A stretch of DNA of 64,000 nucleotides from positions 264,293 through 328,292 of IMG/VR virus record IMGVR_UViG_3300021964_000012. One strand, 5' to 3'. The stretch's first letter is position 1; each line of letters starts with the position of its first letter. Below the pieces are notes generated by a model. That model saw only the letters and a program-made list of their open reading frames with translations, did no database searches and was not told the origin of the DNA. The position numbers and the translations under genes were made by a program. Of the stretch, positions 3,632 to 55,412 are shown in pieces.

Positions 3632-5049
3632 TACTTTGCCTTGTATTCTTGATATAGTTTCATTAGATGATCTTCGCTGACTTCATTAAGCTCTGACTCA
3701 CCAAGCACTGACATTGGGTTGTCTCCACCAGCAACTTTTGGATATGCCATTTTCTTTGGTCCGTTAAGTCCACCAGCAATGTCCTGTGTCATATACTCAG
3801 TATCCATTGTGTTTTCATCATCTGCACCATTGGCAAATTCTTGATCTTCTGCTACGTCAACTTGCACTTCACCGTATCCTGGTTGTGCCATGCCCATTCC
3901 TGCTAATTTAAGCAATTGAGCTAGTTTGGCTGCTTCTTCGCCGCTTGCATTAATATTAATACTTGGCTCTGCGTTTGTTCCAGCATTTACGCTTATGCTC
4001 ATGTCTTCATTCAATTGTGTTGCACGTTTTACAATCTCGTTGCTTTCGTATACACTTGCGTTTTGATATAAAGGCTTACCTGCGCCTTCTGAAGTTGCAA
4101 CTGAACCAGATGAAGTGGTTTCTTCTACTTTTTCTTCTGATTCTTTTTTGAGATCTGGATATCCAGTTCCGCCGCACTCAGAACATTCTTTACCGTCTTC
4201 GTCCTTGCCGTCTTCGCATTGATCACATACTTTACTTCCAGTGCCTTCATCCATTTTACTGCACTTTGAAGCCATAAGTTTAATTTTATCCTGATCGCAG
4301 TCACTGTACTTTTCACAAATTTCAGCTTCTGTCATGCCTTTGTCAACACACGCTTTCATTTCTTTCATAGATGGCATACCATCATGTTCTGCTTCTTCGA
4401 TGGCTTCGTTTTTCTTGTCACCTTTAACAGGATAGGTTTTGCCATCAACTTCAAAACTGTCTTTGCCAGCTTTTATTGCTTTGTCTCTTTCACCTGAAAA
4501 TTCATTGCCTTCTTCTACGTCTGCTTCATCAAGTGGATTTTCTGCCATTATCTTTGCGGCTACGTCTTGTGGTGTGCCTAAGGCTTCTTCAATCTCTTGT
4601 ACAGGAAGACCAGCTAGTTCTGCTAAACGTGCCATTACACCTTGTCTGGCTGCATCTTTCAGTGTACCCGAGTTTTCGTGCATTCCATCTTTGTCATGCT
4701 TCTCATCATACTCGATATCTTTGGTAACGTCTTTACCATCTTTACCAGCATGCTTCATACCATCGTACTTTGCATCATGTGCAACTTCACGTCCGGCTTT
4801 TTCGGCACGATCATCTCTTTCAACATCAGACTCTTTTTCAAACATCTTGTTGTCTTTTTTCTTCTCTGGTAAACCATCAGGACTTTGTTTGTCGCTAAAT
4901 GGAGTATAGTCTGCTTGTTTGTTAAGTTTTGTTTTCTTCATAAGGTCCTCTAGACCTTTTTTCATCATAGCCTGATTGTCTTCTTTATATATCTCAGGTG
5001 CATTTGCTACCTTGTTTAGTTTGGCTAGTGTGTCGTAAATATTGTCCAT
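3631..5049 (-). CDS. Modular acidic protein, candidate prohead core/internal protein
   Basis: Start moved to ATG at 5049 (AAGGA RBS), 472 aa; repeated xxE sites; CxxC...CxxCxGxG motif. Confidence 0.6.
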   Translation of the reverse strand: MDNIYDTLAKLNKVANAPEIYKEDNQAMMKKGLEDLMKKTKLNKQADYTPFSDKQSPDGLPEKKKDNKMFEKESDVERDDRAEKAGREVAHDAKYDGMKHAGKDGKDVTKDIEYDEKHDKDGMHENSGTLKDAARQGVMARLAELAGLPVQEIEEALGTPQDVAAKIMAENPLDEADVEEGNEFSGERDKAIKAGKDSFEVDGKTYPVKGDKKNEAIEEAEHDGMPSMKEMKACVDKGMTEAEICEKYSDCDQDKIKLMASKCSKMDEGTGSKVCDQCEDGKDEDGKECSECGGTGYPDLKKESEEKVEETTSSGSVATSEGAGKPLYQNASVYESNEIVKRATQLNEDMSISVNAGTNAEPSININASGEEAAKLAQLLKLAGMGMAQPGYGEVQVDVAEDQEFANGADDENTMDTEYMTQDIAGGLNGPKKMAYPKVAGGDNPMSVLGESELNEVSEDHLMKLYQEYKAK

Positions 5050-37015: not shown

Positions 37016-37708
37016 TTAACCTAATGAGGCGTTCTCAACTTGTACTAGATCCATGGTTGCAGGAGAAGCAGAACTACCTGATCCACCAACAGCAACTGTG
37101 TCATCTAGAATGTTAAAAAAGTTAATCAATCTTACATTACCACTGAAGTCCACTGAACGTCTACCGCCCATTAGTCTTTCAATACGTACTGCACTTGAAC
37201 CTTCGTCTGTGTATGTTATAGTCATACTACCTGTTGATAAAGCAGCATCAGCTTCGTTTGCAAGTGTACAAATTCCACACTCAGCAGCCGTACCTGAAGT
37301 ACCGGCACCAGCGGCTGCAGTTACAGTAAAAATATGTCCTGCGGCAATTGTTCCTTTACCTGCACCCATTGCTTCCCAGTCGGTATCACCAACTGAAACC
37401 ACTCTTAGTACACTGCCAACCACTGCATTTGCAGGGTCAATAGCGGCAGCATCTAATCTTGATACTTGGTACTTTCTTGCACCTTTTTGCTTGATTATAA
37501 AACCATCACCTTCGGTTGTTACACTTCCACCAGTTGGTCGAATACGACATGTCATTACTGGAAATGTGTAGTCACTGGTGTTAGGATTTCCACCTACTGC
37601 ACCATAGAATAATTCACCAGAAGGTGTTCTTGCGGCACTGTCGTCTCCTGGATTGTTAAAACCAGCATCCTGTGTATCAGATATTTTTATTTTAAGAGGT
37701 CTACCCAT
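37016..37708 (-). CDS. Putative head decoration / structural protein
   Basis: 230 aa directly after the capsid gene, with its own late promoter and AAGGAG RBS; FIIKQKGARKY motif. Confidence 0.6.
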   Translation of the reverse strand: MGRPLKIKISDTQDAGFNNPGDDSAARTPSGELFYGAVGGNPNTSDYTFPVMTCRIRPTGGSVTTEGDGFIIKQKGARKYQVSRLDAAAIDPANAVVGSVLRVVSVGDTDWEAMGAGKGTIAAGHIFTVTAAAGAGTSGTAAECGICTLANEADAALSTGSMTITYTDEGSSAVRIERLMGGRRSVDFSGNVRLINFFNILDDTVAVGGSGSSASPATMDLVQVENASLG

Positions 37709-37797
37709 TTGTTTTCTCCTTTCAAAAAGTTGGCGTTCTAGGCCTACGCGGTTTTGTCCGCATAAAACACTTAATTGTGTTAATAGTATTTATGGTC

Positions 37798-47545: not shown

Positions 47546-48048
47546 TCGATCAAGTGAAGGCTGATATTGAAGATTGGTTGATCAACTTTGTAGAAGTTCC
47601 TCATCCAGCACTAGGAAACTGGCCACCATGTCCGTTTGCTAGGCAGTCAAGACTGAGAAACAAGTACGATGTAAGACCAGGCGCAGATGTTGAACGTGAT
47701 TTATTTTTGTTTGCTAAGAAACAGTACCTGGGTAAAAACGATGTTGTGATATTTGCCTACGCTCCTGACCAGTATGATGATGCCTACTTCAACTGGGCAG
47801 TAGACACTATGAACATGAGCAAAGGTTTTAAAAAACGCAACCTACTAGCACTAGCAGATCATCCTGACACAGTCGAAACACACAACGGTGTCTGTTTCAA
47901 CATGGGTAAATATGCACTAGTATTACTACAAGACAAAACTAAACTAAACGAACATGCACGTATGTTAGCACACAGAGGCTACTATGATGGATGGGACGAA
48001 GAATACCTGCAAGAGGTATTTGCACATAGACGAGATCCAAGAAAATGA
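47539..48048 (+). CDS. Hypothetical protein (DUF1415/DUF6875-like CPFA motif)
   Basis: WL..FVEVPHPALG..PPCPFA, DHPD; TTG start. Confidence 0.55.
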   Translation: MVIDQVKADIEDWLINFVEVPHPALGNWPPCPFARQSRLRNKYDVRPGADVERDLFLFAKKQYLGKNDVVIFAYAPDQYDDAYFNWAVDTMNMSKGFKKRNLLALADHPDTVETHNGVCFNMGKYALVLLQDKTKLNEHARMLAHRGYYDGWDEEYLQEVFAHRRDPRK

Positions 48049-48476
48049 TATACGCAAGAATTGACCTCAGTCAAACCAATTACACAATTATGGATAACTG
48101 CAAAAAACTTTCATGCCCATTTCCAAAACCACTTGAAGCAATTTACGATGCTTACTGCAAGCACAAAAAATTTAAAAGTGTTATGCCTATATTTCCAGAA
48201 GAATATTATGACGACAAAAACGAAGTCTATGGTTACTACAACAAAGATGAAAAACTGGTTGCATTCAGTCTACTTAGATGTTATAATAACAAGAACGTTG
48301 AAGCTGTACAGTTTGCTTGGGACTATAAGAACCCAGGATTGCGTTTAGGCATACGCAGTTTAAAAAACGAGTGTGCAATATATAAAAAACGTGGTTTTGA
48401 ATATTTGTATCTCGGCCAAGCAGATGATTATAAAGCAAAAATTGACGGCTTTGAAATACTTGGAGGCAGAATATAA
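48045..48476 (+). CDS. Aminoacyl-tRNA--protein transferase (ATE/Bpt C-terminal)-like GNAT protein
   Basis: KLVAFS...EAVQFAWD...LRLG..SL..E......GFEYLYLG...YK pattern aligns by eye with ATE_C. Confidence 0.65.
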   Translation: MIYARIDLSQTNYTIMDNCKKLSCPFPKPLEAIYDAYCKHKKFKSVMPIFPEEYYDDKNEVYGYYNKDEKLVAFSLLRCYNNKNVEAVQFAWDYKNPGLRLGIRSLKNECAIYKKRGFEYLYLGQADDYKAKIDGFEILGGRI

Positions 48477-48793
48477 TGAACGTTTACACCATTTACGCCG
48501 ATGTAAAAGAAGGTATAGATGCACGAACATTTGTAGCAAACATGAAGCTTTTTCTCGATAAATTGCCCACCATGCATGCCTACAGAATCACAAGAATGAA
48601 ACTAGGATTCCGTTCAATGGATTTGCCAGAGTTTAGAATTGACATGGAATTTGAAAGCATGCAGGCACTTGACGATGCTATGAGTCACGTGGTAGCAAAC
48701 GTTGATGATATTGAAACAGAACATGTAGGTTTCAATCAATGGGTTGATGTAGAAACCATACAACATTTTCTCTATAGAGACTATCCAGACTAA
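48476..48793 (+). CDS. Dimeric alpha-beta barrel-like protein (DUF6614-like)
   Basis: YRITRMKLGF...PEFRIDMEF.SMQALDDA. Confidence 0.6.
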   Translation: MNVYTIYADVKEGIDARTFVANMKLFLDKLPTMHAYRITRMKLGFRSMDLPEFRIDMEFESMQALDDAMSHVVANVDDIETEHVGFNQWVDVETIQHFLYRDYPD

Positions 48794-49389
48794 CACCATC
48801 CATTTATGTAATCTTCCAGCATGATTTGCTTGATACGCAGTTGTTGTAAATTGGTTGGGGCCGCACGCATACGGTTATCTTTGCGATGATGTGTAGTACC
48901 TGCTGGTACGCCTAGCTGTTCTGCTATTTTGTGAACTTCTTTATAGTTATAGATATGTGTATACACAGATTGATCAGGACCTAGTCGAGCAGTGTTAGTT
49001 TCGCAATGATCAGCAACGTTTGGATTTTGTTTATAAACATCAAAATCCTTAATAAAGTTGTTTAGACTAGGTGATTTAATCCATAGATTTTGATTAGCAC
49101 TATTGGTCATGGTATGATAGAAACCACTTACAAACTTTTCTATTGGATCACGCCACAGTGCAATGCGTATGTCAGCTGACATCAGCTCATGTTCAAACTC
49201 TTCAAAATACCTAGACTTATTGTATACACCAGGACACTCGTTTTCAAAACTTCTAAAATGTTGAATTTCGTTTGGATCAGCATTCCATATTGCTTGTGCA
49301 ACATAACTCAACATGGTCGTAGTGCTACATTTATGATTACGCACTATTGCTATCGTTTTGGTATAATGATCAAATTTAATTAAGCCCAT
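48790..49389 (-). CDS. Sulfotransferase family protein
   Basis: 5'-PSB-like HKCSTTT and 3'-PB-like RDPIEKFVSGF; terminal ED(Y) motif. Confidence 0.75.
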   Translation of the reverse strand: MGLIKFDHYTKTIAIVRNHKCSTTTMLSYVAQAIWNADPNEIQHFRSFENECPGVYNKSRYFEEFEHELMSADIRIALWRDPIEKFVSGFYHTMTNSANQNLWIKSPSLNNFIKDFDVYKQNPNVADHCETNTARLGPDQSVYTHIYNYKEVHKIAEQLGVPAGTTHHRKDNRMRAAPTNLQQLRIKQIMLEDYINGWC

Positions 49390-49403
49390 GTGCTTATTTA
49401 ATT

Positions 49404-49855
49404 AGATGTCTAAAGACATCTGTTGCTTCGTTAACACTCAGCAACACTTTTTAGAAGTCCTCATCTAGATAGTTTGGTCATACTTGCCCTACTAAGGGCA
49501 AGTCTAAAAAACCGGTTCTCATCTGAGTTATCCAGTCACTTGAATAAAGAGATTTGCGTATGCAACAGGGGCGGTTGTGCTGTACCCCTTACTCTAGCCT
49601 TGTCTCACAACGGACCGTTCTGTATACCCCTTCAAGCAAAGTATACCAACGTATGGGTTGTATCTGTTTCACAGAGCCCATGTCATTCTAGCCTTAAGTT
49701 AGCTATATCCTTTGACGCACCAGTTCTGTCGGCTACAACTTGTGTTGGCAGACCTCAAGGTGGATCGAGGTTCCTCGATCAAACGATGTCATATTAGCTT
49801 GGGAAATTTAAAAAGTTGCTCTGAGCATAGCTCTAGTAGTGCCTGTGTCATACTT
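49404..49855 (-). ncRNA. Candidate large structured non-coding RNA (family not identified)
   Basis: ~450-nt gap in an otherwise gene-dense genome, higher GC than flanking genes, at least 9 stems and 2 potential pseudoknots. Confidence 0.6.
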
Positions 49856-49857
49856 GT

Positions 49858-50679
49858 TTATGACGTGGTATTGAGTGCCTGTACAAAAATTGTTGTCAAG
49901 TGTTTGTTGGTTTTTATGCCTGGATGCTTGTTGTCTTTGTTGGTATCTATCTTGTTTGATTCCATTGAATTATAAAGATTTAGCCATTTATCTTCACGTA
50001 TTGTACCTGCTTTTTGATATTCGTCGTGCATTTTATTATATAATATTTTATAGTCTTCATCATTTCGTGTTTCTAAATCTAAAAGATCTTGTGTATACGG
50101 AGTAGTTTCTTTTGGAACCTCATACTCCACCTTTTTAAAAAAGTTCTTGTCCCAATTGCACAAGCCGTTTATAAAGCTAATGTTGGTATTAGTTAGTTCT
50201 GCTATACAAGTCAAAATGTTTATATATTCGATCAATTGAACCAACCTATAATGTTCGTGTTCTAATAATATAAATCTATCAAAACAATCTTGTACGTAAT
50301 CACCAGGATATGAAACATTGTTGTGCAAGTTTATCGATCGTTCTTTACCACCTGCACACGAACGTCTTGTTGTATCCCAAGTCTCTAATCCAGGTGACCA
50401 TTCATGTCTCATAGGCGACGTCCATTGTACAAATGCATGGCTATACCTGTTCTTTAACAATGCACTAGCAGTAGTTTGAAATATTCTTAGATTACTGTTG
50501 CCTCCGGTTGCAATGTTGTCTAAAGGTTGACCAAAAAATAATTGATTATGAAGCAAATTTACCCACAGATGATTGCTATGTTTACAGTCACCGAACCCGC
50601 GTTGTCCTTCTTCATTGATCCATTCATCACAGAAACCCACGCCAGCAGTAAAACTACAACCTGAATACAACACAGTCAT
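49858..50679 (-). CDS. SGNH/GDSL-like hydrolase-fold protein
   Basis: SGCSFTAG, NIATGGNSN, VQWT, DNKHPG. Confidence 0.6.
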   Translation of the reverse strand: MTVLYSGCSFTAGVGFCDEWINEEGQRGFGDCKHSNHLWVNLLHNQLFFGQPLDNIATGGNSNLRIFQTTASALLKNRYSHAFVQWTSPMRHEWSPGLETWDTTRRSCAGGKERSINLHNNVSYPGDYVQDCFDRFILLEHEHYRLVQLIEYINILTCIAELTNTNISFINGLCNWDKNFFKKVEYEVPKETTPYTQDLLDLETRNDEDYKILYNKMHDEYQKAGTIREDKWLNLYNSMESNKIDTNKDNKHPGIKTNKHLTTIFVQALNTTS

Positions 50680-51083
50680 CCTTTGAGTATTCCTTTCTGA
50701 TGAACACGTACTCTAATATGCCCGTTATACCAATCATTTGATTCTAACACCTTGTGTGTGAATTGTTCTCTGGCCTCAATGTAACTTAATTCACTTTTGT
50801 TTTTACACCAAAACATTATTTCTCGTTTGAACTTGTCTTTTCCTAATTTTTCTACATCTGCTGAAAGCTCATCACTGCTTCCATAGTATTCCTGCCAGTC
50901 ACTTTCAACAGTGTATCTGCGTTTGTTTGTTCTACCCTTAAGTGGCTTTTTACTACGTTTAAACTGTGTTAGTTTCTTGCCTATGTATTTCCTATCATTG
51001 GTTGTATTTGTTATTATATAAACAAAACCAATCATGCCTTCTGGTATGTCGAGAACTTCTTTGTCTTTATAAAACCAACTCAT
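50676..51083 (-). CDS. Stand-alone GIY-YIG endonuclease
   Basis: GFVYIITN...RKYIGKK, YYGSS, FKREI, E...F...VL...YN. Confidence 0.8.
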   Translation of the reverse strand: MSWFYKDKEVLDIPEGMIGFVYIITNTTNDRKYIGKKLTQFKRSKKPLKGRTNKRRYTVESDWQEYYGSSDELSADVEKLGKDKFKREIMFWCKNKSELSYIEAREQFTHKVLESNDWYNGHIRVRVHQKGILKG

Positions 51084-52854: not shown

Positions 52855-54399
52855 TTATGTCTTATTTGCAATTGAAAACAAAGCCTTAAACTGCGGAAAG
52901 ATCATGGAAAAAGATTCATTTCTGTGTTTATCGAGTGTCACAGTTCGTTTTGTAAATTCATTTAATTCGTATTGAGTATCTATTGAATTCATAAAGTTTC
53001 TAAGTTCAGCCCAATTTTGTGCTAATTCACATTGGCCTATGTAATCAATGTGATTGTTAATTTGTATGGTTAGATGTTTTTTGTGTACATCTGGTAAAGT
53101 AGTTACACATAGATAACGAGGATCAACGAGAGTAGTGATTCGCAATTGATCAGGTGTAAATAACTCAGTATCAATCCAGTGTGTTTGTAATTTGATTAGA
53201 TTGTCAAGTGTAGGCCAACTTACCGTAGAAGAAATATGTAGATCTACATGTGGTGTGTGACTTTTAATCGCATTGATGTTATCAATTATATCTTGCCATA
53301 CTGTTCCGTGACGCATGTATTCTGCTACTTGACCGCTTGCATCAATACTTGCCCCAACAGATATATTAGAAAACTGTTTCCAATAATCAAATATATTATT
53401 ATTCTTGTATGTCAGTTTACTCAAATTGGTATTGTACAAGAGTTTAATATCAAAATTTTTGACTTCAATCAATTGATCAAGTATACCATAGTGTTCTTCT
53501 GTTATTAAAGGTTCTCCTCCAGCAAAATATATCTTTTCAAGATCATTGGTAAGATAAGGTTTAAGTTTTTCCAAGTTTTTTTGTCTATCTTTCCGGGTGC
53601 TAGAATCGAGACTGATTTTTTCGTAACCAAGTACTGCATCTTTGCCAAATATTTCAACAGTTTCTTGTTGAATACTACTACTGAAGTATTCACTACACAT
53701 TCTGCACTTGAAGTTACAGATATTATTAAGTCTTACATCTAAAAATGTCACCTTTTGCCGACTAACAGAAATAGGTTTAAACTTCTGCCTCATACTTTGT
53801 AAATTGTTGTCTTCTTTTTTGTAACACTCACTACAACATTTTGTACGATAACCCTTAATCATCCATTGTCGTATGTTCTGTGCTTGACTTGAATCTAGTA
53901 TGTCCTCAATTGATTGTTCTTTAATATTTCCAAGAGGATACCTGTGATCAGCAATACAACACGGCAACACATTGCTATCTGTTCCAACATATAAATGATT
54001 CCATAGTTTTTTACATGCAGTATCTTTGTACGACGGAACTGTAACTTTATAGTTTCCTGGATAGACACAACTTGTAAACAATGTTGTATCAGAACTGTAT
54101 ACTGTGTTTACTTCTGCTATTTCAGTTTGTATCTTAGTATTTGGTGTAAGGATTAAAATAAAACAATTTCCAATATCAACTTGATTGACTATTTTTTGTA
54201 GTTCAATTAGTTTTGAACCACATGCATCAATAAAAGGATAATAATCAACACTCCGTTGTACTATTACAATTCTCTCGTTTAGTTTAAAAGTGTCTTTCCG
54301 TAATGCAAGTAACTGTTTCTTAAGTTGTTCTGAACCAGCATCAAATTCAACGGTACCAACTACCTCTATGTCTTTGTCAACATAAGATAACAGATCCAT
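52855..54399 (-). CDS. Radical SAM protein with twitch/SPASM-like Cys domain
   Basis: CNFKCRMC, FAGGEPL, NTN, ASIDA; upstream C...PCC...CxxC cluster. Confidence 0.9.
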   Translation of the reverse strand: MDLLSYVDKDIEVVGTVEFDAGSEQLKKQLLALRKDTFKLNERIVIVQRSVDYYPFIDACGSKLIELQKIVNQVDIGNCFILILTPNTKIQTEIAEVNTVYSSDTTLFTSCVYPGNYKVTVPSYKDTACKKLWNHLYVGTDSNVLPCCIADHRYPLGNIKEQSIEDILDSSQAQNIRQWMIKGYRTKCCSECYKKEDNNLQSMRQKFKPISVSRQKVTFLDVRLNNICNFKCRMCSEYFSSSIQQETVEIFGKDAVLGYEKISLDSSTRKDRQKNLEKLKPYLTNDLEKIYFAGGEPLITEEHYGILDQLIEVKNFDIKLLYNTNLSKLTYKNNNIFDYWKQFSNISVGASIDASGQVAEYMRHGTVWQDIIDNINAIKSHTPHVDLHISSTVSWPTLDNLIKLQTHWIDTELFTPDQLRITTLVDPRYLCVTTLPDVHKKHLTIQINNHIDYIGQCELAQNWAELRNFMNSIDTQYELNEFTKRTVTLDKHRNESFSMIFPQFKALFSIANKT

Positions 54400-55412
54400 T
54401 ATAAACTCCTGTAAATCTCCAGCAATAGTTTGTTGTCATAGAACTCTGAGTCAATGTTTATGATTTGTTCAGTAACAATCTGATCGACACTTTCAAATTT
54501 AATATCGCCTGGTTGCATTTCTTCTTCTAATGCACTGCGTTTGTTTGGTATAAGCGCCATTTCACGTAGGTTATATTTGGTTGCAAACTGTTCTTTGATA
54601 TAGTTTGCCTCTTCATAGGATATTTCTATATCCAAGTTCACTCTAACATGCATGTTTGGTTTTAGTATTGTGTCAGCATAATCGATTACCTGCGACAAGT
54701 CAAGCACTTTGTACAATGGTTGATCTGGCCAAGCAATGTATTCTGGCTCTTTGCCCCATTCAAGTATCATGCAACCACGCTGATCATCGCCTGCATCTGA
54801 GAAGTTGTGCGGAAATGCATTGCCAATATAGTTGATGTTGTTTTTCTGTTGACGCAAATGAAAGTGTCCACTGAACACAGTGCCATACTGTTGGAAGTGT
54901 TCTGATTTGATTTCTCCATGATCGGGCATCTCTACCATTGCATTCATTTTAAAGTGTGGAAGTTCAAAGTGTCCAAACATGTACTGAGCACTTGCAGTCT
55001 TAATCTGTTTGTGATCATCTCCGACTAGCCAAGGAACAAGTATTACATCATCCTGTTCAAACCAGTCGTTGCATATTTTTAGATTTGGTATGTGCTTGGC
55101 CCATTCAAAACTGTATATGTCACGTTTGTCTCGATAATACAAGTCGTGATTGCCAGTAATAAAGTAGGTGATGTCAAAACTACGTGAAAGATTTTCTAAA
55201 GCACGTAGACTGTGGCTCATGGTTTGTAAACTTAGGCTTGCTCTATGATGATGCCAGTCGCCCATGAAGATAGCAGTTTCACAGTTGTGTATCTTACCCT
55301 GTTGTACTGCCCACTCTACAAAGTTTTCACAGTCCTGGTTATGCATGATGCTATTGCTTTTCATGCCAAAGTGTATGTCTGTGAACACCAGAGCTTTCTT
55401 AAACAAACCCAT
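54399..55412 (-). CDS. gp47: Recombination endonuclease nuclease subunit (Mre11/SbcD-like)
   Basis: TDIHFG, GDWHH, GNHD, GHFE, SGHFH. Confidence 0.95.
   Translation of the reverse strand: MGLFKKALVFTDIHFGMKSNSIMHNQDCENFVEWAVQQGKIHNCETAIFMGDWHHHRASLSLQTMSHSLRALENLSRSFDITYFITGNHDLYYRDKRDIYSFEWAKHIPNLKICNDWFEQDDVILVPWLVGDDHKQIKTASAQYMFGHFELPHFKMNAMVEMPDHGEIKSEHFQQYGTVFSGHFHLRQQKNNINYIGNAFPHNFSDAGDDQRGCMILEWGKEPEYIAWPDQPLYKVLDLSQVIDYADTILKPNMHVRVNLDIEISYEEANYIKEQFATKYNLREMALIPNKRSALEEEMQPGDIKFESVDQIVTEQIINIDSEFYDNKLLLEIYRSL

What the first reader, a model, noticed from the sequence alone, without database searches (positions are those of the whole stretch)
49460..49538. Duplicated UGAC-N10-AGAUGAG module flanking a 9-bp hairpin at the 3' end of the ncRNA candidate
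Seen: on the minus strand TGAC-tggataactc-AGATGAG and TGAC-caaactatct-AGATGAG occur exactly 58 nt apart, separated by the ACTTGCCCT/AGGGCAAGT hairpin. A second direct repeat (AAGGCTAGA) occurs at 49593-601 and 49687-95. Inference: UGA...GAUGA resembles box D'/C' K-loop motifs or twin protein-binding sites with variable 10-nt inserts, a layout that could hold guide segments. No Nop- or L7Ae-domain protein is visible in this window.
Basis: partly seen in the sequence, partly recalled or inferred. Interest (0 to 1): 0.6.

Follow-up and report, generated by a model that had tools for sequence, protein, structure and literature searches.

The report
Twin identical loops in phage RNA
The duplicated motif is real: it is a conserved pair of loops in the 3' part of a large, knotted non-coding RNA of aquatic T4-like phages, and the two loops always carry the same 7-letter word although that word differs between phages, which rules out a box C/D guide RNA and points to a still unknown two-site partner.

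Summary
TGAC-N10-AGATGAG occurs twice on the minus strand (49538-49518 and 49480-49460), 58 nt apart, flanking the hairpin at 49503-49482.

It lies in a 468-nt gap that is a structured RNA. The RNA was found in more than 200 viral contigs. It almost always sits just after a 135-aa GIY-YIG nuclease gene.

Its core has five helices, two of them pseudoknots, all with compensatory changes. In sister lineages the 5' domain is the orphan Rfam motif Polynucleobacter-1. The window's own 5' domain is different, and the module region is unannotated.

The K-turn/guide reading fails:
- The "C-like" GA becomes AA or CA in many members.
- The box order is wrong for guides.
- The N10 insert is clade-specific, not hypervariable.

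The new result is that the heptamer RGAURAD is identical in both modules in 119 of 120 distinct members, while at least 11 different heptamers occur. The two copies switch together about as often as true base pairs do. I found no complementary partner in the RNA or its flanks, and no tracking residue in the nuclease.

Best reading: twin single-stranded docking sites for one bivalent trans partner. The function is untested.

The parts
49404..49864 (-). Whole structured RNA, about 460 nt. It runs from a hairpin overlapping the stop codon of the upstream ORF to the terminal hairpin, and it fills the gap between ORF 49858-50679 and ORF 48790-49389.
   Evidence: No ORF of 40 aa or more on the minus strand here. 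The DNA is 83-95% identical in relatives whose flanking protein is only 77-80% identical. nhmmer hits reach E 1e-179 in the closest viral loci and about 1e-20 to 1e-37 in most distant ones. GNRA loops and compensatory changes occur on this strand.
49643..49796 (-). Lineage-specific 5' domain: helix GAC/GUC enclosing hairpin GAUCGAG-GAAC-CUCGAUC (49763-49780), helix CACC/GGUG, hairpin CAAC-ACAA-GUUG (49736-49747), then hairpin AUGGG...CCCAU (49653-49681).
   Evidence: RNAalifold on 14 relatives gives 19 pairs, 8 of them with double changes. No Polynucleobacter-1 hit here even at E up to 10, whereas sister loci carry that motif at this position.
49545..49650 (-). Conserved pseudoknotted core. 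S1 is a long hairpin (49617-49650) whose loop (UUUGC in the window) pairs with GCAAA at about 49551-49556 (PK1). CCGUUG (49606-49613) pairs with CAAC in the loop of the GGGG...CCCC hairpin S3 (49568-49588) (PK2). S2 is AGAG/CUCU.
   Evidence: the count of structure pairs on 66 sequences, counted over the five core helices plus hairpin H: 89% of cells paired versus 37-49% in slid controls, and 356 double-change cells versus 106 in shuffles. PK1 is 95% paired with all 5 pairs compensatory. PK2 is 100% paired, with UA:54 / CG:11 at one pair. Window coordinates.
49518..49539 (-). Module 1: 5' box GUGAC, insert UGGAUA, invariant ACUC, heptamer AGAUGAG (49524-49518).
   Evidence: ACUGG (49536-49532) can pair with CCGGU (49515-49511). 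In relatives the linker is complementary to the 5' box in sliding registers. The mean duplex energy is -4.2 versus -2.8 / -3.4 kcal/mol in controls, so this stem has only weak support.
49482..49503 (-). Hairpin H between the modules (ACUUGCCCU-UAGU-AGGGCAAGU).
   Evidence: Present in all relatives; stem mostly GCCC/GGGC with variable loops. The distant clade has GGCUAG-AAA-UAGCC instead.
49460..49481 (-). Module 2: 5' box AUGAC, insert CAAACU, invariant AUCU, heptamer AGAUGAG (49466-49460).
   Evidence: The heptamer is identical to that of module 1 in 119/120 distinct family members.
49422..49445 (-). Hairpin with a conserved internal UGA/GAA (candidate tandem G.A), a 2-bp GC stem and a GNRA-type loop. 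Family consensus uGAGCg.aAGCGAAa.
   Evidence: Consensus and covarying outer stem (pairs 276-292 and 277-291).
49404..49421 (-). Terminal hairpin AGAUGUC-UUUA-GACAUCU, the likely 3' end. No U-tract.
   Evidence: Stem covaries strongly (pairs 300-312, 301-311, 302-310, 303-309). No canonical terminator was called.
50676..51083 (-). 135-aa GIY-YIG nuclease-domain protein with no DNA-binding domain. It is the conserved upstream neighbour of the RNA.
   Evidence: Pfam SegE_GIY-YIG, E 4.6e-36. Model pLDDT 88; best PDB fold match is the I-TevI catalytic domain (prob 0.93, E 0.16). It is upstream on the same strand in 183 of 212 RNA loci, on the opposite strand in 9, and absent in 4.
49858..50679 (-). 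273-aa ORF inserted between the GIY-YIG gene and the RNA in the window's sub-clade only. It is not part of the conserved cassette.
   Evidence: No Pfam or PHROG hit. Absent in L005, L008 and L011, where the RNA follows the 135-aa gene directly.
49593..49601 (-). AAGGCUAGA copy 2; its AGAG is the 5' strand of helix S2. Copy 1 lies at 49687-49695 in the linker between the 5' multi-helix and the AUGGG hairpin.
   Evidence: It is a repeat only in the window clade.

Best explanation
The two modules belong to the 3' domain of a roughly 460-nt, pseudoknotted, phage-specific non-coding RNA transcribed from the minus strand. The RNA is a conserved cassette partner of a small GIY-YIG nuclease gene in aquatic T4-like phages.

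In sister lineages the 5' domain of the same RNA is the orphan Rfam motif Polynucleobacter-1. The module region is its unannotated 3' continuation.

The 3' domain is an old tandem duplication of a unit. Each unit has a 5' box RUGAC, a short clade-specific insert, an invariant A(C/U)(U/C)(C/U), a heptamer RGAURAD, and then a hairpin.

Shown:
- The heptamers have no Watson-Crick partner in the RNA or its surroundings.
- They are kept identical to each other while changing between phages.
- They co-switch as often as true base pairs of the same RNA.

Inferred: the two heptamers are exposed single strands. They work as twin docking sites for one bivalent trans partner, such as two copies or two repeats of a nucleic acid, or a dimer. 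Both sites must therefore read the same. They are neither K-turns nor programmable guides.
For: RNA family and strand:
- The gap is more conserved than the flanking protein.
- nhmmer finds it in more than 200 loci.
- Helices and two pseudoknots have compensatory changes: 89% paired versus 37-49% slid; 356 versus 106 double-change cells.
- The 5' domain fold is.

Link to Polynucleobacter-1: RF01718 hits of 62-121 bits lie about 80 nt 5' of the same core in 27 loci.

Phage-specific: only 4 of 96 genome-collection pattern hits are real, all on short or MAG contigs.

Cassette: the GIY-YIG gene is upstream in 183/212 loci.

Twin heptamers:
- Identical in 119/120 distinct RNAs, with at least 11 heptamers.
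- The top mutual-information pairs are identities, not complements.
- Parsimony counts (module 1 / module 2 / joint): y 20/20/21, z 15/15/16, w 18/18/20. Proven pairs give 17/17/19 and 23/24/26.

No partner found:
- No cis partner.
- No third copy.
- No complement in the window.
Against: - No partner has been identified.
- A co-evolving trans partner needs three-way changes about 15-20 times, which is less parsimonious than a two-way contact.
- If the partner paired through G.U-tolerant helices, mixed A/G states would be expected, and none are seen.
- No residue of the neighbouring nuclease tracks the heptamer (max MI 0.24 of 1.0 bit).
- Single-strandedness of the boxes is inferred only. Local folds leave them unpaired in 46-69% of sequences.
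- Transcription of the RNA has not been shown.
Confidence: 0.45

Rival explanations
1. Direct box-to-box contact. The two heptamers lie side by side in parallel and form homo-pairs (A.A, G.G, U.U, C.C), making the tandem units a pseudo-symmetric fold. Identity is then the structural analogue of complementarity.
For: Co-switching is as frequent and as clean as in true base pairs, which is what a two-way contact predicts. Every observed combination is a self-pair. The position just before the invariant tetramer also favours self-pairs or U/A (pair 168-223). No third partner was found.
Against: To my knowledge no 7-position parallel homo-paired stretch is known in a natural RNA. Purine-purine and U.U self-pairs are not isosteric, yet position w uses U, A and G. 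Box spacing varies from 48 to 67 nt. There is no structural data.
Confidence: 0.15
2. Box C/D-like K-turn (K-loop) modules with 10-nt guide inserts, bound by an L7Ae-type protein.
For: Superficial resemblance of UGA...GAUGA to D'/C' boxes. Weak sub-threshold snoRNA hits nearby (E 1.5, far below gathering scores).
Against: The essential GA dinucleotides are not conserved (AGAUAA, GGAUAA, ACAUGA, GCAUAA, GCCACA; UGGC, UGAU). The box order is D-like then C-like, so the insert is not in the guide position. The insert is clade-specific, has an invariant 3' tetramer, and never differs among RNAs that are 90% or more identical. The host range is bacteriophage. None of the 10 neighbouring proteins has an L7Ae or Nop domain.
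Confidence: 0.02
3. Twin processing or strand-transfer sites. The same enzyme or ribozyme step acts at the same position in both heptamers, excising or circularising the roughly 58-nt unit that carries hairpin H. Alternatively, a polymerase switches template between them. Either way an identical core is needed, as in recombination overlap regions or viral transcription-regulating sequences.
For: "Identical but free to vary" is the signature of strand-exchange cores. The heptamer length matches typical 6-8-nt overlaps (general knowledge). The flanks of the two boxes stay different.
Against: No recombinase, ligase or reverse transcriptase among the ten neighbouring proteins scanned against Pfam, nor among the Pfam-annotated genes of the roughly 16-kb locus. 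No ribozyme family matched. A 50-60-bp DNA excision is physically implausible. No family members were seen with one or three clean units, except a degenerate third box in L060 and L050.
Confidence: 0.08
4. DNA-level sites. The repeats are recognition or immunity sites for the adjacent GIY-YIG (homing-type) endonuclease or another DNA-binding protein, and the RNA structure is incidental to them.
For: Constant adjacency to a GIY-YIG gene. Seg-type endonucleases of T4 sit next to conserved genes, including the tRNA cluster (general knowledge).
Against: No protein column tracks the heptamer. The RNA occurs without the gene in 4 loci, and the gene occurs without the RNA in Melnitz and cyanophages. 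The gene is fixed rather than sporadic, unlike a mobile endonuclease gene. The boxes sit between RNA helices that covary.
Confidence: 0.08
5. A diverged member of a classical pseudoknotted RNA family: two-piece tmRNA (as in related phages such as Melnitz), RNase P RNA, or a group I intron associated with the GIY-YIG gene.
For: Size, GNRA loops and pseudoknots. Relatives of these phages encode tmRNA (PMC9004378). GIY-YIG genes often accompany group I introns.
Against: Rfam gives no hit even at E up to 10. ARAGORN finds nothing in the window or in 40 related loci. There is no conserved tag reading frame, because indels break it. The flanking ORFs are complete and differ between loci, so there are no exons. 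Melnitz tmRNA is elsewhere in that genome.
Confidence: 0.03

Closest known systems
Polynucleobacter-1 RNA motif (Rfam RF01718; Weinberg et al. 2010, PMC2864571)
   Same: It lies at the same genomic place (right after the 135-aa GIY-YIG gene) and on the same transcript strand in sister phages. It is followed about 80 nt later by the same pseudoknotted core, twin modules and terminal hairpins.
   Different: The Rfam model covers only 141 nt of 5' domain and is listed as a possible cis-regulator of unknown function. The window's RNA has a different 5' domain that the model does not detect. The finding lies wholly in the unmodelled 3' part.
Large ornate phage-associated RNAs (GOLLD, ROOL; PMC12286853)
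   Same: Several-hundred-nucleotide, highly structured, protein-free-looking RNAs carried by phages, of unknown biochemical function, discovered by comparative genomics.
   Different: No sequence or structure match. This RNA is smaller (about 460 nt), has a different gene context, and no evidence on multimerisation.
Box C/D sRNA with K-turn / K-loop
   Same: Two UGA...GAUGA-like box pairs in tandem.
   Different: The GA pairs are not conserved, the box order is wrong for guides, there is no terminal C/D stem, and the host is a bacteriophage.
RNAs with two or more equivalent sites for one partner: guanidine-II riboswitch twin ACGR loops, CsrB/RsmZ GGA loops for dimeric CsrA, lambda nutL/nutR boxB for N protein, tandem T-box leaders with the same specifier (comparisons from general knowledge)
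   Same: Several sites in one RNA or genome must read the same because one partner reads them all. Half of the family even carries GGAUGA, which resembles a CsrA site.
   Different: In those systems the site is constant, or changes with a known co-evolving protein. Here the word changes about 15-20 times without any detectable partner change. The other half of the family has AGA instead of GGA. The heptamer is not self-complementary, so a guanidine-II-type kissing contact is not possible.
Type III antitoxin RNA repeats (ToxI)
   Same: Tandem repeated pseudoknot-forming RNA units next to a nuclease gene.
   Different: ToxI repeats are near-identical over their whole length and precede an endoRNase toxin. 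Here only the boxes match, the RNA follows the gene, and the protein has a GIY-YIG DNA-nuclease fold.

Membership tests
Box C/D sRNA (K-turn) | Conserved box C RUGAUGA and box D CUGA whose GA dinucleotides form tandem sheared G.A pairs | tested here: not met
   The C-like box is AGAUAA or GGAUAA in about 43% of 105 representatives. ACAUGA, GCAUAA and GCCACA also occur. The D-like box varies to UGGC, UGAU and UGAA.
Box C/D sRNA (K-turn) | Guide of 10 nt or more placed 5' of box D/D' (order C-guide-D'...C'-guide-D) and varying with its target | tested here: not met
   The order here is D-like, insert, C-like. The insert's last 4 nt are invariant and the rest is clade-specific. It never differs in RNAs that are 90% or more identical.
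Box C/D sRNA (K-turn) | L7Ae / Nop5 / fibrillarin partners encoded by the organism | not tested
   Only the 10 neighbouring proteins were scanned, with none found. The rest of the 328-kb contig is not available.
Polynucleobacter-1 (RF01718) | Covariance-model score at or above the gathering threshold (37 bits) | tested here: not met
   No hit in 49300-49950 even at E up to 10. Sister loci score 62-121 bits.
Polynucleobacter-1 (RF01718) | Same locus and homologous downstream RNA (extended family) | tested here: met
   The window's 3' domain aligns to the region 3' of the motif in those loci, with nhmmer E about 1e-20 to 1e-37. The same upstream gene is present.
tmRNA (one- or two-piece) | tRNA-like domain plus tag reading frame, detectable by ARAGORN or Rfam | tested here: not met
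   The candidate frame is broken by indels in relatives.
RNase P RNA / group I intron | Match to the Rfam covariance models; for an intron, flanking exons of one gene | tested here: not met
   No hit at E up to 10. The flanking ORFs are complete and differ between loci.
Type III antitoxin repeats | Tandem near-identical repeats upstream of an endoRNase toxin gene | tested here: not met
   Only the 5' box, tetramer and heptamer are shared. The RNA is downstream of a GIY-YIG gene.

The most novel reading that the evidence does not exclude
The RNA is the targeting or regulatory cofactor of the neighbouring GIY-YIG nuclease, which lacks any DNA-binding domain. Its two loops each hold one nucleic-acid segment through the clade-specific insert plus the heptamer. 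The shared heptamer is a common core that must be identical in the two bound segments. This is a bridge-RNA-like, two-site arrangement for a GIY-YIG enzyme.
Probability: 0.05. Interest if true: 0.95.

Novelty: new variant of a known kind. Interest (0 to 1): 0.66.

Why it matters
An orphan Rfam motif listed since 2010 as a possible short cis-regulator turns out, in these phages, to be the head of a 450-nt pseudoknotted RNA. That RNA is a fixed partner of a minimal GIY-YIG nuclease gene in a very widespread group of aquatic T4-like phages.

The twin heptamers show a kind of covariation, identity instead of complementarity, that standard RNA tools do not look for. It must reflect either an undiscovered bivalent partner or an unusual RNA-RNA contact.

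Either outcome gives a clean experiment: mutate one box, the other, or both. It may also open the function of a large phage RNA class.

Tried and rejected
Searches for a known identity:
- Rfam at gathering and at E up to 10 gave nothing for this region.
- ARAGORN on the window and on 40 loci gave nothing.
- blastn of the RNA against 50,697 phage records gave no match.
- The tmRNA idea prompted by Melnitz was dropped: its tmRNA is elsewhere, and the Melnitz GIY-YIG homologue has no large gap after it.
- Literature searches found nothing on this RNA beyond the 2010 table entry.

Searches for a partner of the heptamer:
- Mutual information over the full-length alignment found none.
- Exact reverse complements within +/-2.5 kb showed no enrichment.
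- G.U-tolerant complements from -800 to +1400, compared with shuffled heptamer assignments, showed no enrichment.
- Extra sense copies in the locus: none.
- Complements in the 64-kb window: only two hits, on the wrong strand.
- Residues of the GIY-YIG protein that track the heptamer: none.

Structural and coding ideas tested by hand against the haplotype lists:
- Antiparallel pairing between the boxes predicts mixed A/G states and fails for the G-to-C variants.
- Pairing between the two inserts is inconsistent across clades.
- A coding reading of the boxes fails because the spacing is not a multiple of 3 and stop codons intervene.
- A CsrA-site reading fails because half the family has AGA.

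Other:
- The sigma-70 promoter and terminator scan gave no more than chance.
- PDB sequence searches for the nuclease were empty.
- The genome-collection pattern scan was mostly chance hits in high-GC genomes.

Full report
**1. The observation.**
On the minus strand, TGAC-TGGATAACTC-AGATGAG occupies 49538-49518 and TGAC-CAAACTATCT-AGATGAG occupies 49480-49460, with starts 58 nt apart. The hairpin ACTTGCCCT-TAGT-AGGGCAAGT (49503-49482) lies between them. The 21-nt pattern has only these two exact matches in the window. AAGGCTAGA is at 49593-49601 and 49687-49695.

**2. Setting.**
The window is part of a T4-like phage. It carries a Portal_T4 protein, a T4 baseplate protein and a gp46-like SMC/AAA protein. 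It matches the contig IMGVR_UViG_3300021964_000012, 328 kb. The finding lies in a 468-nt gap (49390-49857) with no minus-strand ORF of 40 aa or more.
- Upstream on the same strand are a 135-aa protein with a SegE_GIY-YIG domain (50676-51083; E 4.6e-36) and a 273-aa ORF without any family hit.
- Downstream is a 199-aa sulfotransferase-like ORF.
- Rfam finds nothing in the gap, even at E up to 10.
- ARAGORN finds no tRNA or tmRNA.
- The phage record collection has no similar DNA.

**3. It is a conserved structured RNA.**
Relatives whose flanking protein is only 77-80% identical have 83-95% identical DNA in the gap. Differences fall in hairpin loops (several GNRA on the minus strand) or are compensatory. 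Profile searches found the element in about 30 distinct contigs at first. A scan with the most conserved core pattern raised this to more than 200 loci. Of 96 pattern hits in the genome collection only 4 are real, all on short or MAG contigs. The RNA is therefore essentially phage-borne.

**4. Structure.**
I tested a manual model on 66 diverse sequences with the count of structure pairs. The elements are:
- S1, a long hairpin.
- PK1, in which the S1 loop pairs with a segment about 120 nt downstream.
- PK2, in which CCGUUG pairs with CAAC in the loop of the hairpin S3 that holds GGUACMGSAYAACCGCC.
- S2 and S3, two nested helices.
- Hairpin H, between the modules.

Results:
- 89% of cells are paired, against 37-49% when the partners are slid.
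- 356 cells have changes on both sides, against 106 in shuffles.
- All five PK1 pairs are compensatory.
- PK2 is 100% paired, with UA:54 / CG:11 at one position.

The window's 5' domain folds into a multi-helix with 8 compensatory pairs among 14 relatives. Two further hairpins close the RNA. One has a conserved UGA/GAA internal loop and a GNRA loop. The other is a terminal stem with strong covariation.

**5. Relation to a known motif.**
In 27 of the related loci Rfam detects Polynucleobacter-1 (RF01718, 62-121 bits). It lies about 80 nt 5' of the shared core, on the same strand, directly after the GIY-YIG gene. That motif is a 141-nt orphan from Weinberg et al. 2010, listed only in a table as a possible cis-regulator. 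The modules therefore belong to the unmodelled 3' two-thirds of the same RNA. The window's clade and several others carry a different 5' domain that the model does not detect.

**6. Gene context.**
The 135-aa gene is immediately upstream on the same strand in 183 of 212 RNA loci, on the opposite strand in 9, and absent in 4. About 120 of these loci were found through the RNA pattern, not through the protein.
- The protein is a bare GIY-YIG domain. The model has pLDDT 88, and the best PDB match is the I-TevI catalytic domain (probability 0.93, E 0.16).
- Homologues in cyanophages sit near nrdB, where T4 has denA (T4 order from memory), and are mis-named "NAD synthetase". They, and Melnitz, lack the RNA.
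- The 273-aa ORF is an insertion specific to the window's sub-clade.

**7. The modules across the family.**
Every member has two units. Each consists of RUGAC, a 5-8-nt clade-specific insert, the invariant ACUC (module 1) or AUCU (module 2), a heptamer RGAURAD, and then a hairpin. The hairpin is H after module 1 and usually a UUCG hairpin after module 2. The box-to-box distance ranges from 48 to 67 nt.

The K-turn reading fails:
- The second GA of the C-like box is AA in about 43% of representatives.
- The first GA is CA in some members.
- UGAC varies to UGGC, UGAU and UGAA.

The guide reading fails too. The insert is in the wrong place relative to the boxes, is partly invariant, and never differs among RNAs that are 90% or more identical.

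**8. The unexpected result.**
The heptamer is identical in the two modules in 119 of 120 distinct RNAs. Yet at least 11 heptamers occur:
- AGAUAAU 26
- GGAUGAA 16
- GGAUAAU 15
- GGAUGAU 14
- AGAUGAU 8
- AGAUGAA 6
- AGAUGAG 5 (the window's heptamer)
- others, plus a CCACAG type in the clade with inverted gene order

About 16% identity would be expected from the heptamer frequencies alone (my arithmetic). The strongest mutual-information pairs of the whole alignment include these identity pairs, on a par with the best Watson-Crick pairs.

On a tree built from the rest of the RNA, parsimony counts the changes as module 1 / module 2 / joint character:
- Position y: 20 / 20 / 21
- Position z: 15 / 15 / 16
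- Position w: 18 / 18 / 20
- Proven base pairs of the same RNA: 17 / 17 / 19 and 23 / 24 / 26

The joint count stays close to each single-site count, so the two sites change together, as proven base pairs do. The nucleotides flanking the heptamers stay different between the modules. Wholesale gene conversion is therefore unlikely.

**9. Search for the partner.**
- No column of the RNA pairs with the variable heptamer positions.
- No complement specific to a phage's own heptamer exists within -800 to +1400 nt, with or without G.U.
- There is no third copy.
- There is no sense-strand complement in the 64-kb window.
- No residue of the GIY-YIG protein tracks the heptamer (best MI 0.24 of 1.0 bit).
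- Antiparallel box-box pairing is contradicted by the haplotypes.
- Module 1 probably forms a short stem between its 5' box and the linker after the heptamer, which would put the heptamer in a loop. Support is modest.

**10. Interpretation.**
- Shown: a large pseudoknotted phage RNA, a conserved cassette with a minimal GIY-YIG gene, and a tandem pair of modules whose heptamers are held identical.
- Inferred: the heptamers are exposed and act as twin docking sites for one bivalent partner.
- Main rival: a direct parallel contact between the boxes through self-pairs. This fits the two-way evolutionary statistics best but has no natural precedent that I know of.
- Less likely: twin processing or strand-transfer cores, DNA-level sites for the nuclease, or a diverged classical RNA.
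- Effectively refuted: the box C/D idea.

**11. Novelty.**
The 5' motif of sister lineages is known but uncharacterised. The full-length RNA, its pseudoknotted core, its fixed pairing with the GIY-YIG gene and the identity-covarying twin heptamers were not found in the literature searched. I rate it a new variant of a known kind (large structured phage RNAs / extended Polynucleobacter-1), with one feature that is unusual in its own right.

Noticed in passing
window 37706-37782 (-): A freshwater-2 RNA (RF02980) scores 64.6 bits, above its gathering score. It is a second orphan structured RNA in the same phage.
   Followed up: no
window 49858-50679 (-): A 273-aa ORF with no Pfam or PHROG hit is inserted between the GIY-YIG gene and the RNA, only in the window's sub-clade (also L012, where it is 268 aa). 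Its N-terminus (GCSFTAG) looks SGNH-hydrolase-like by eye.
   Followed up: partly
window 49422-49445 (-): A hairpin with a family-wide conserved internal UGA/GAA (candidate tandem sheared G.A pairs), a GC stem and a GNRA loop (consensus uGAGCg.aAGCGAAa). This is the one place in the RNA where a GA motif really is invariant, and it might be a protein-binding site.
   Followed up: partly
window 48045-48476 (+): A 143-aa ORF has a weak hit to the C-terminal domain of arginine-tRNA-protein transferase (ATE_C, E 9.4e-06), which is unusual for a phage.
   Followed up: no
window 52855-54399 (-): A 514-aa radical SAM / SPASM protein lies next to the gp46-like (SMC_N/AAA_23) recombination-nuclease gene; the adjacent 337-aa ORF (54399-55412) may be its gp47-like partner but was not scanned.
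   Followed up: no
L060 about 3957-3968 and L050 about 3861-3872: A third, degenerate box-like element (AUCUAGAUAAU / ACUUAGAUAAU) lies 62-65 nt after module 2 in a sub-clade with an enlarged 3' region. In L060 its heptamer differs from the other two.
   Followed up: partly
L024, L029, L035, L038, L040 (RNA upstream of the GIY-YIG gene, opposite strand): One clade has the RNA inverted relative to the nuclease gene. It carries a different heptamer type (GCCACAG/ACCACAG) and a GGCUAG-AAA-UAGCC version of hairpin H. The heptamer is still the same in both modules.
   Followed up: partly
L097, L096, L102, L123: Four loci have the RNA but no GIY-YIG gene within reach upstream, so the RNA can exist without the nuclease gene.
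   Followed up: no
window 49847-49864 (-): A small hairpin overlaps the stop codon of the upstream ORF. It shows a compensatory variant in L012 (GUCAUA...UAUGAC becomes GCAUAA...UUAUGC), which suggests the RNA structure starts inside the coding end of the upstream gene.
   Followed up: partly
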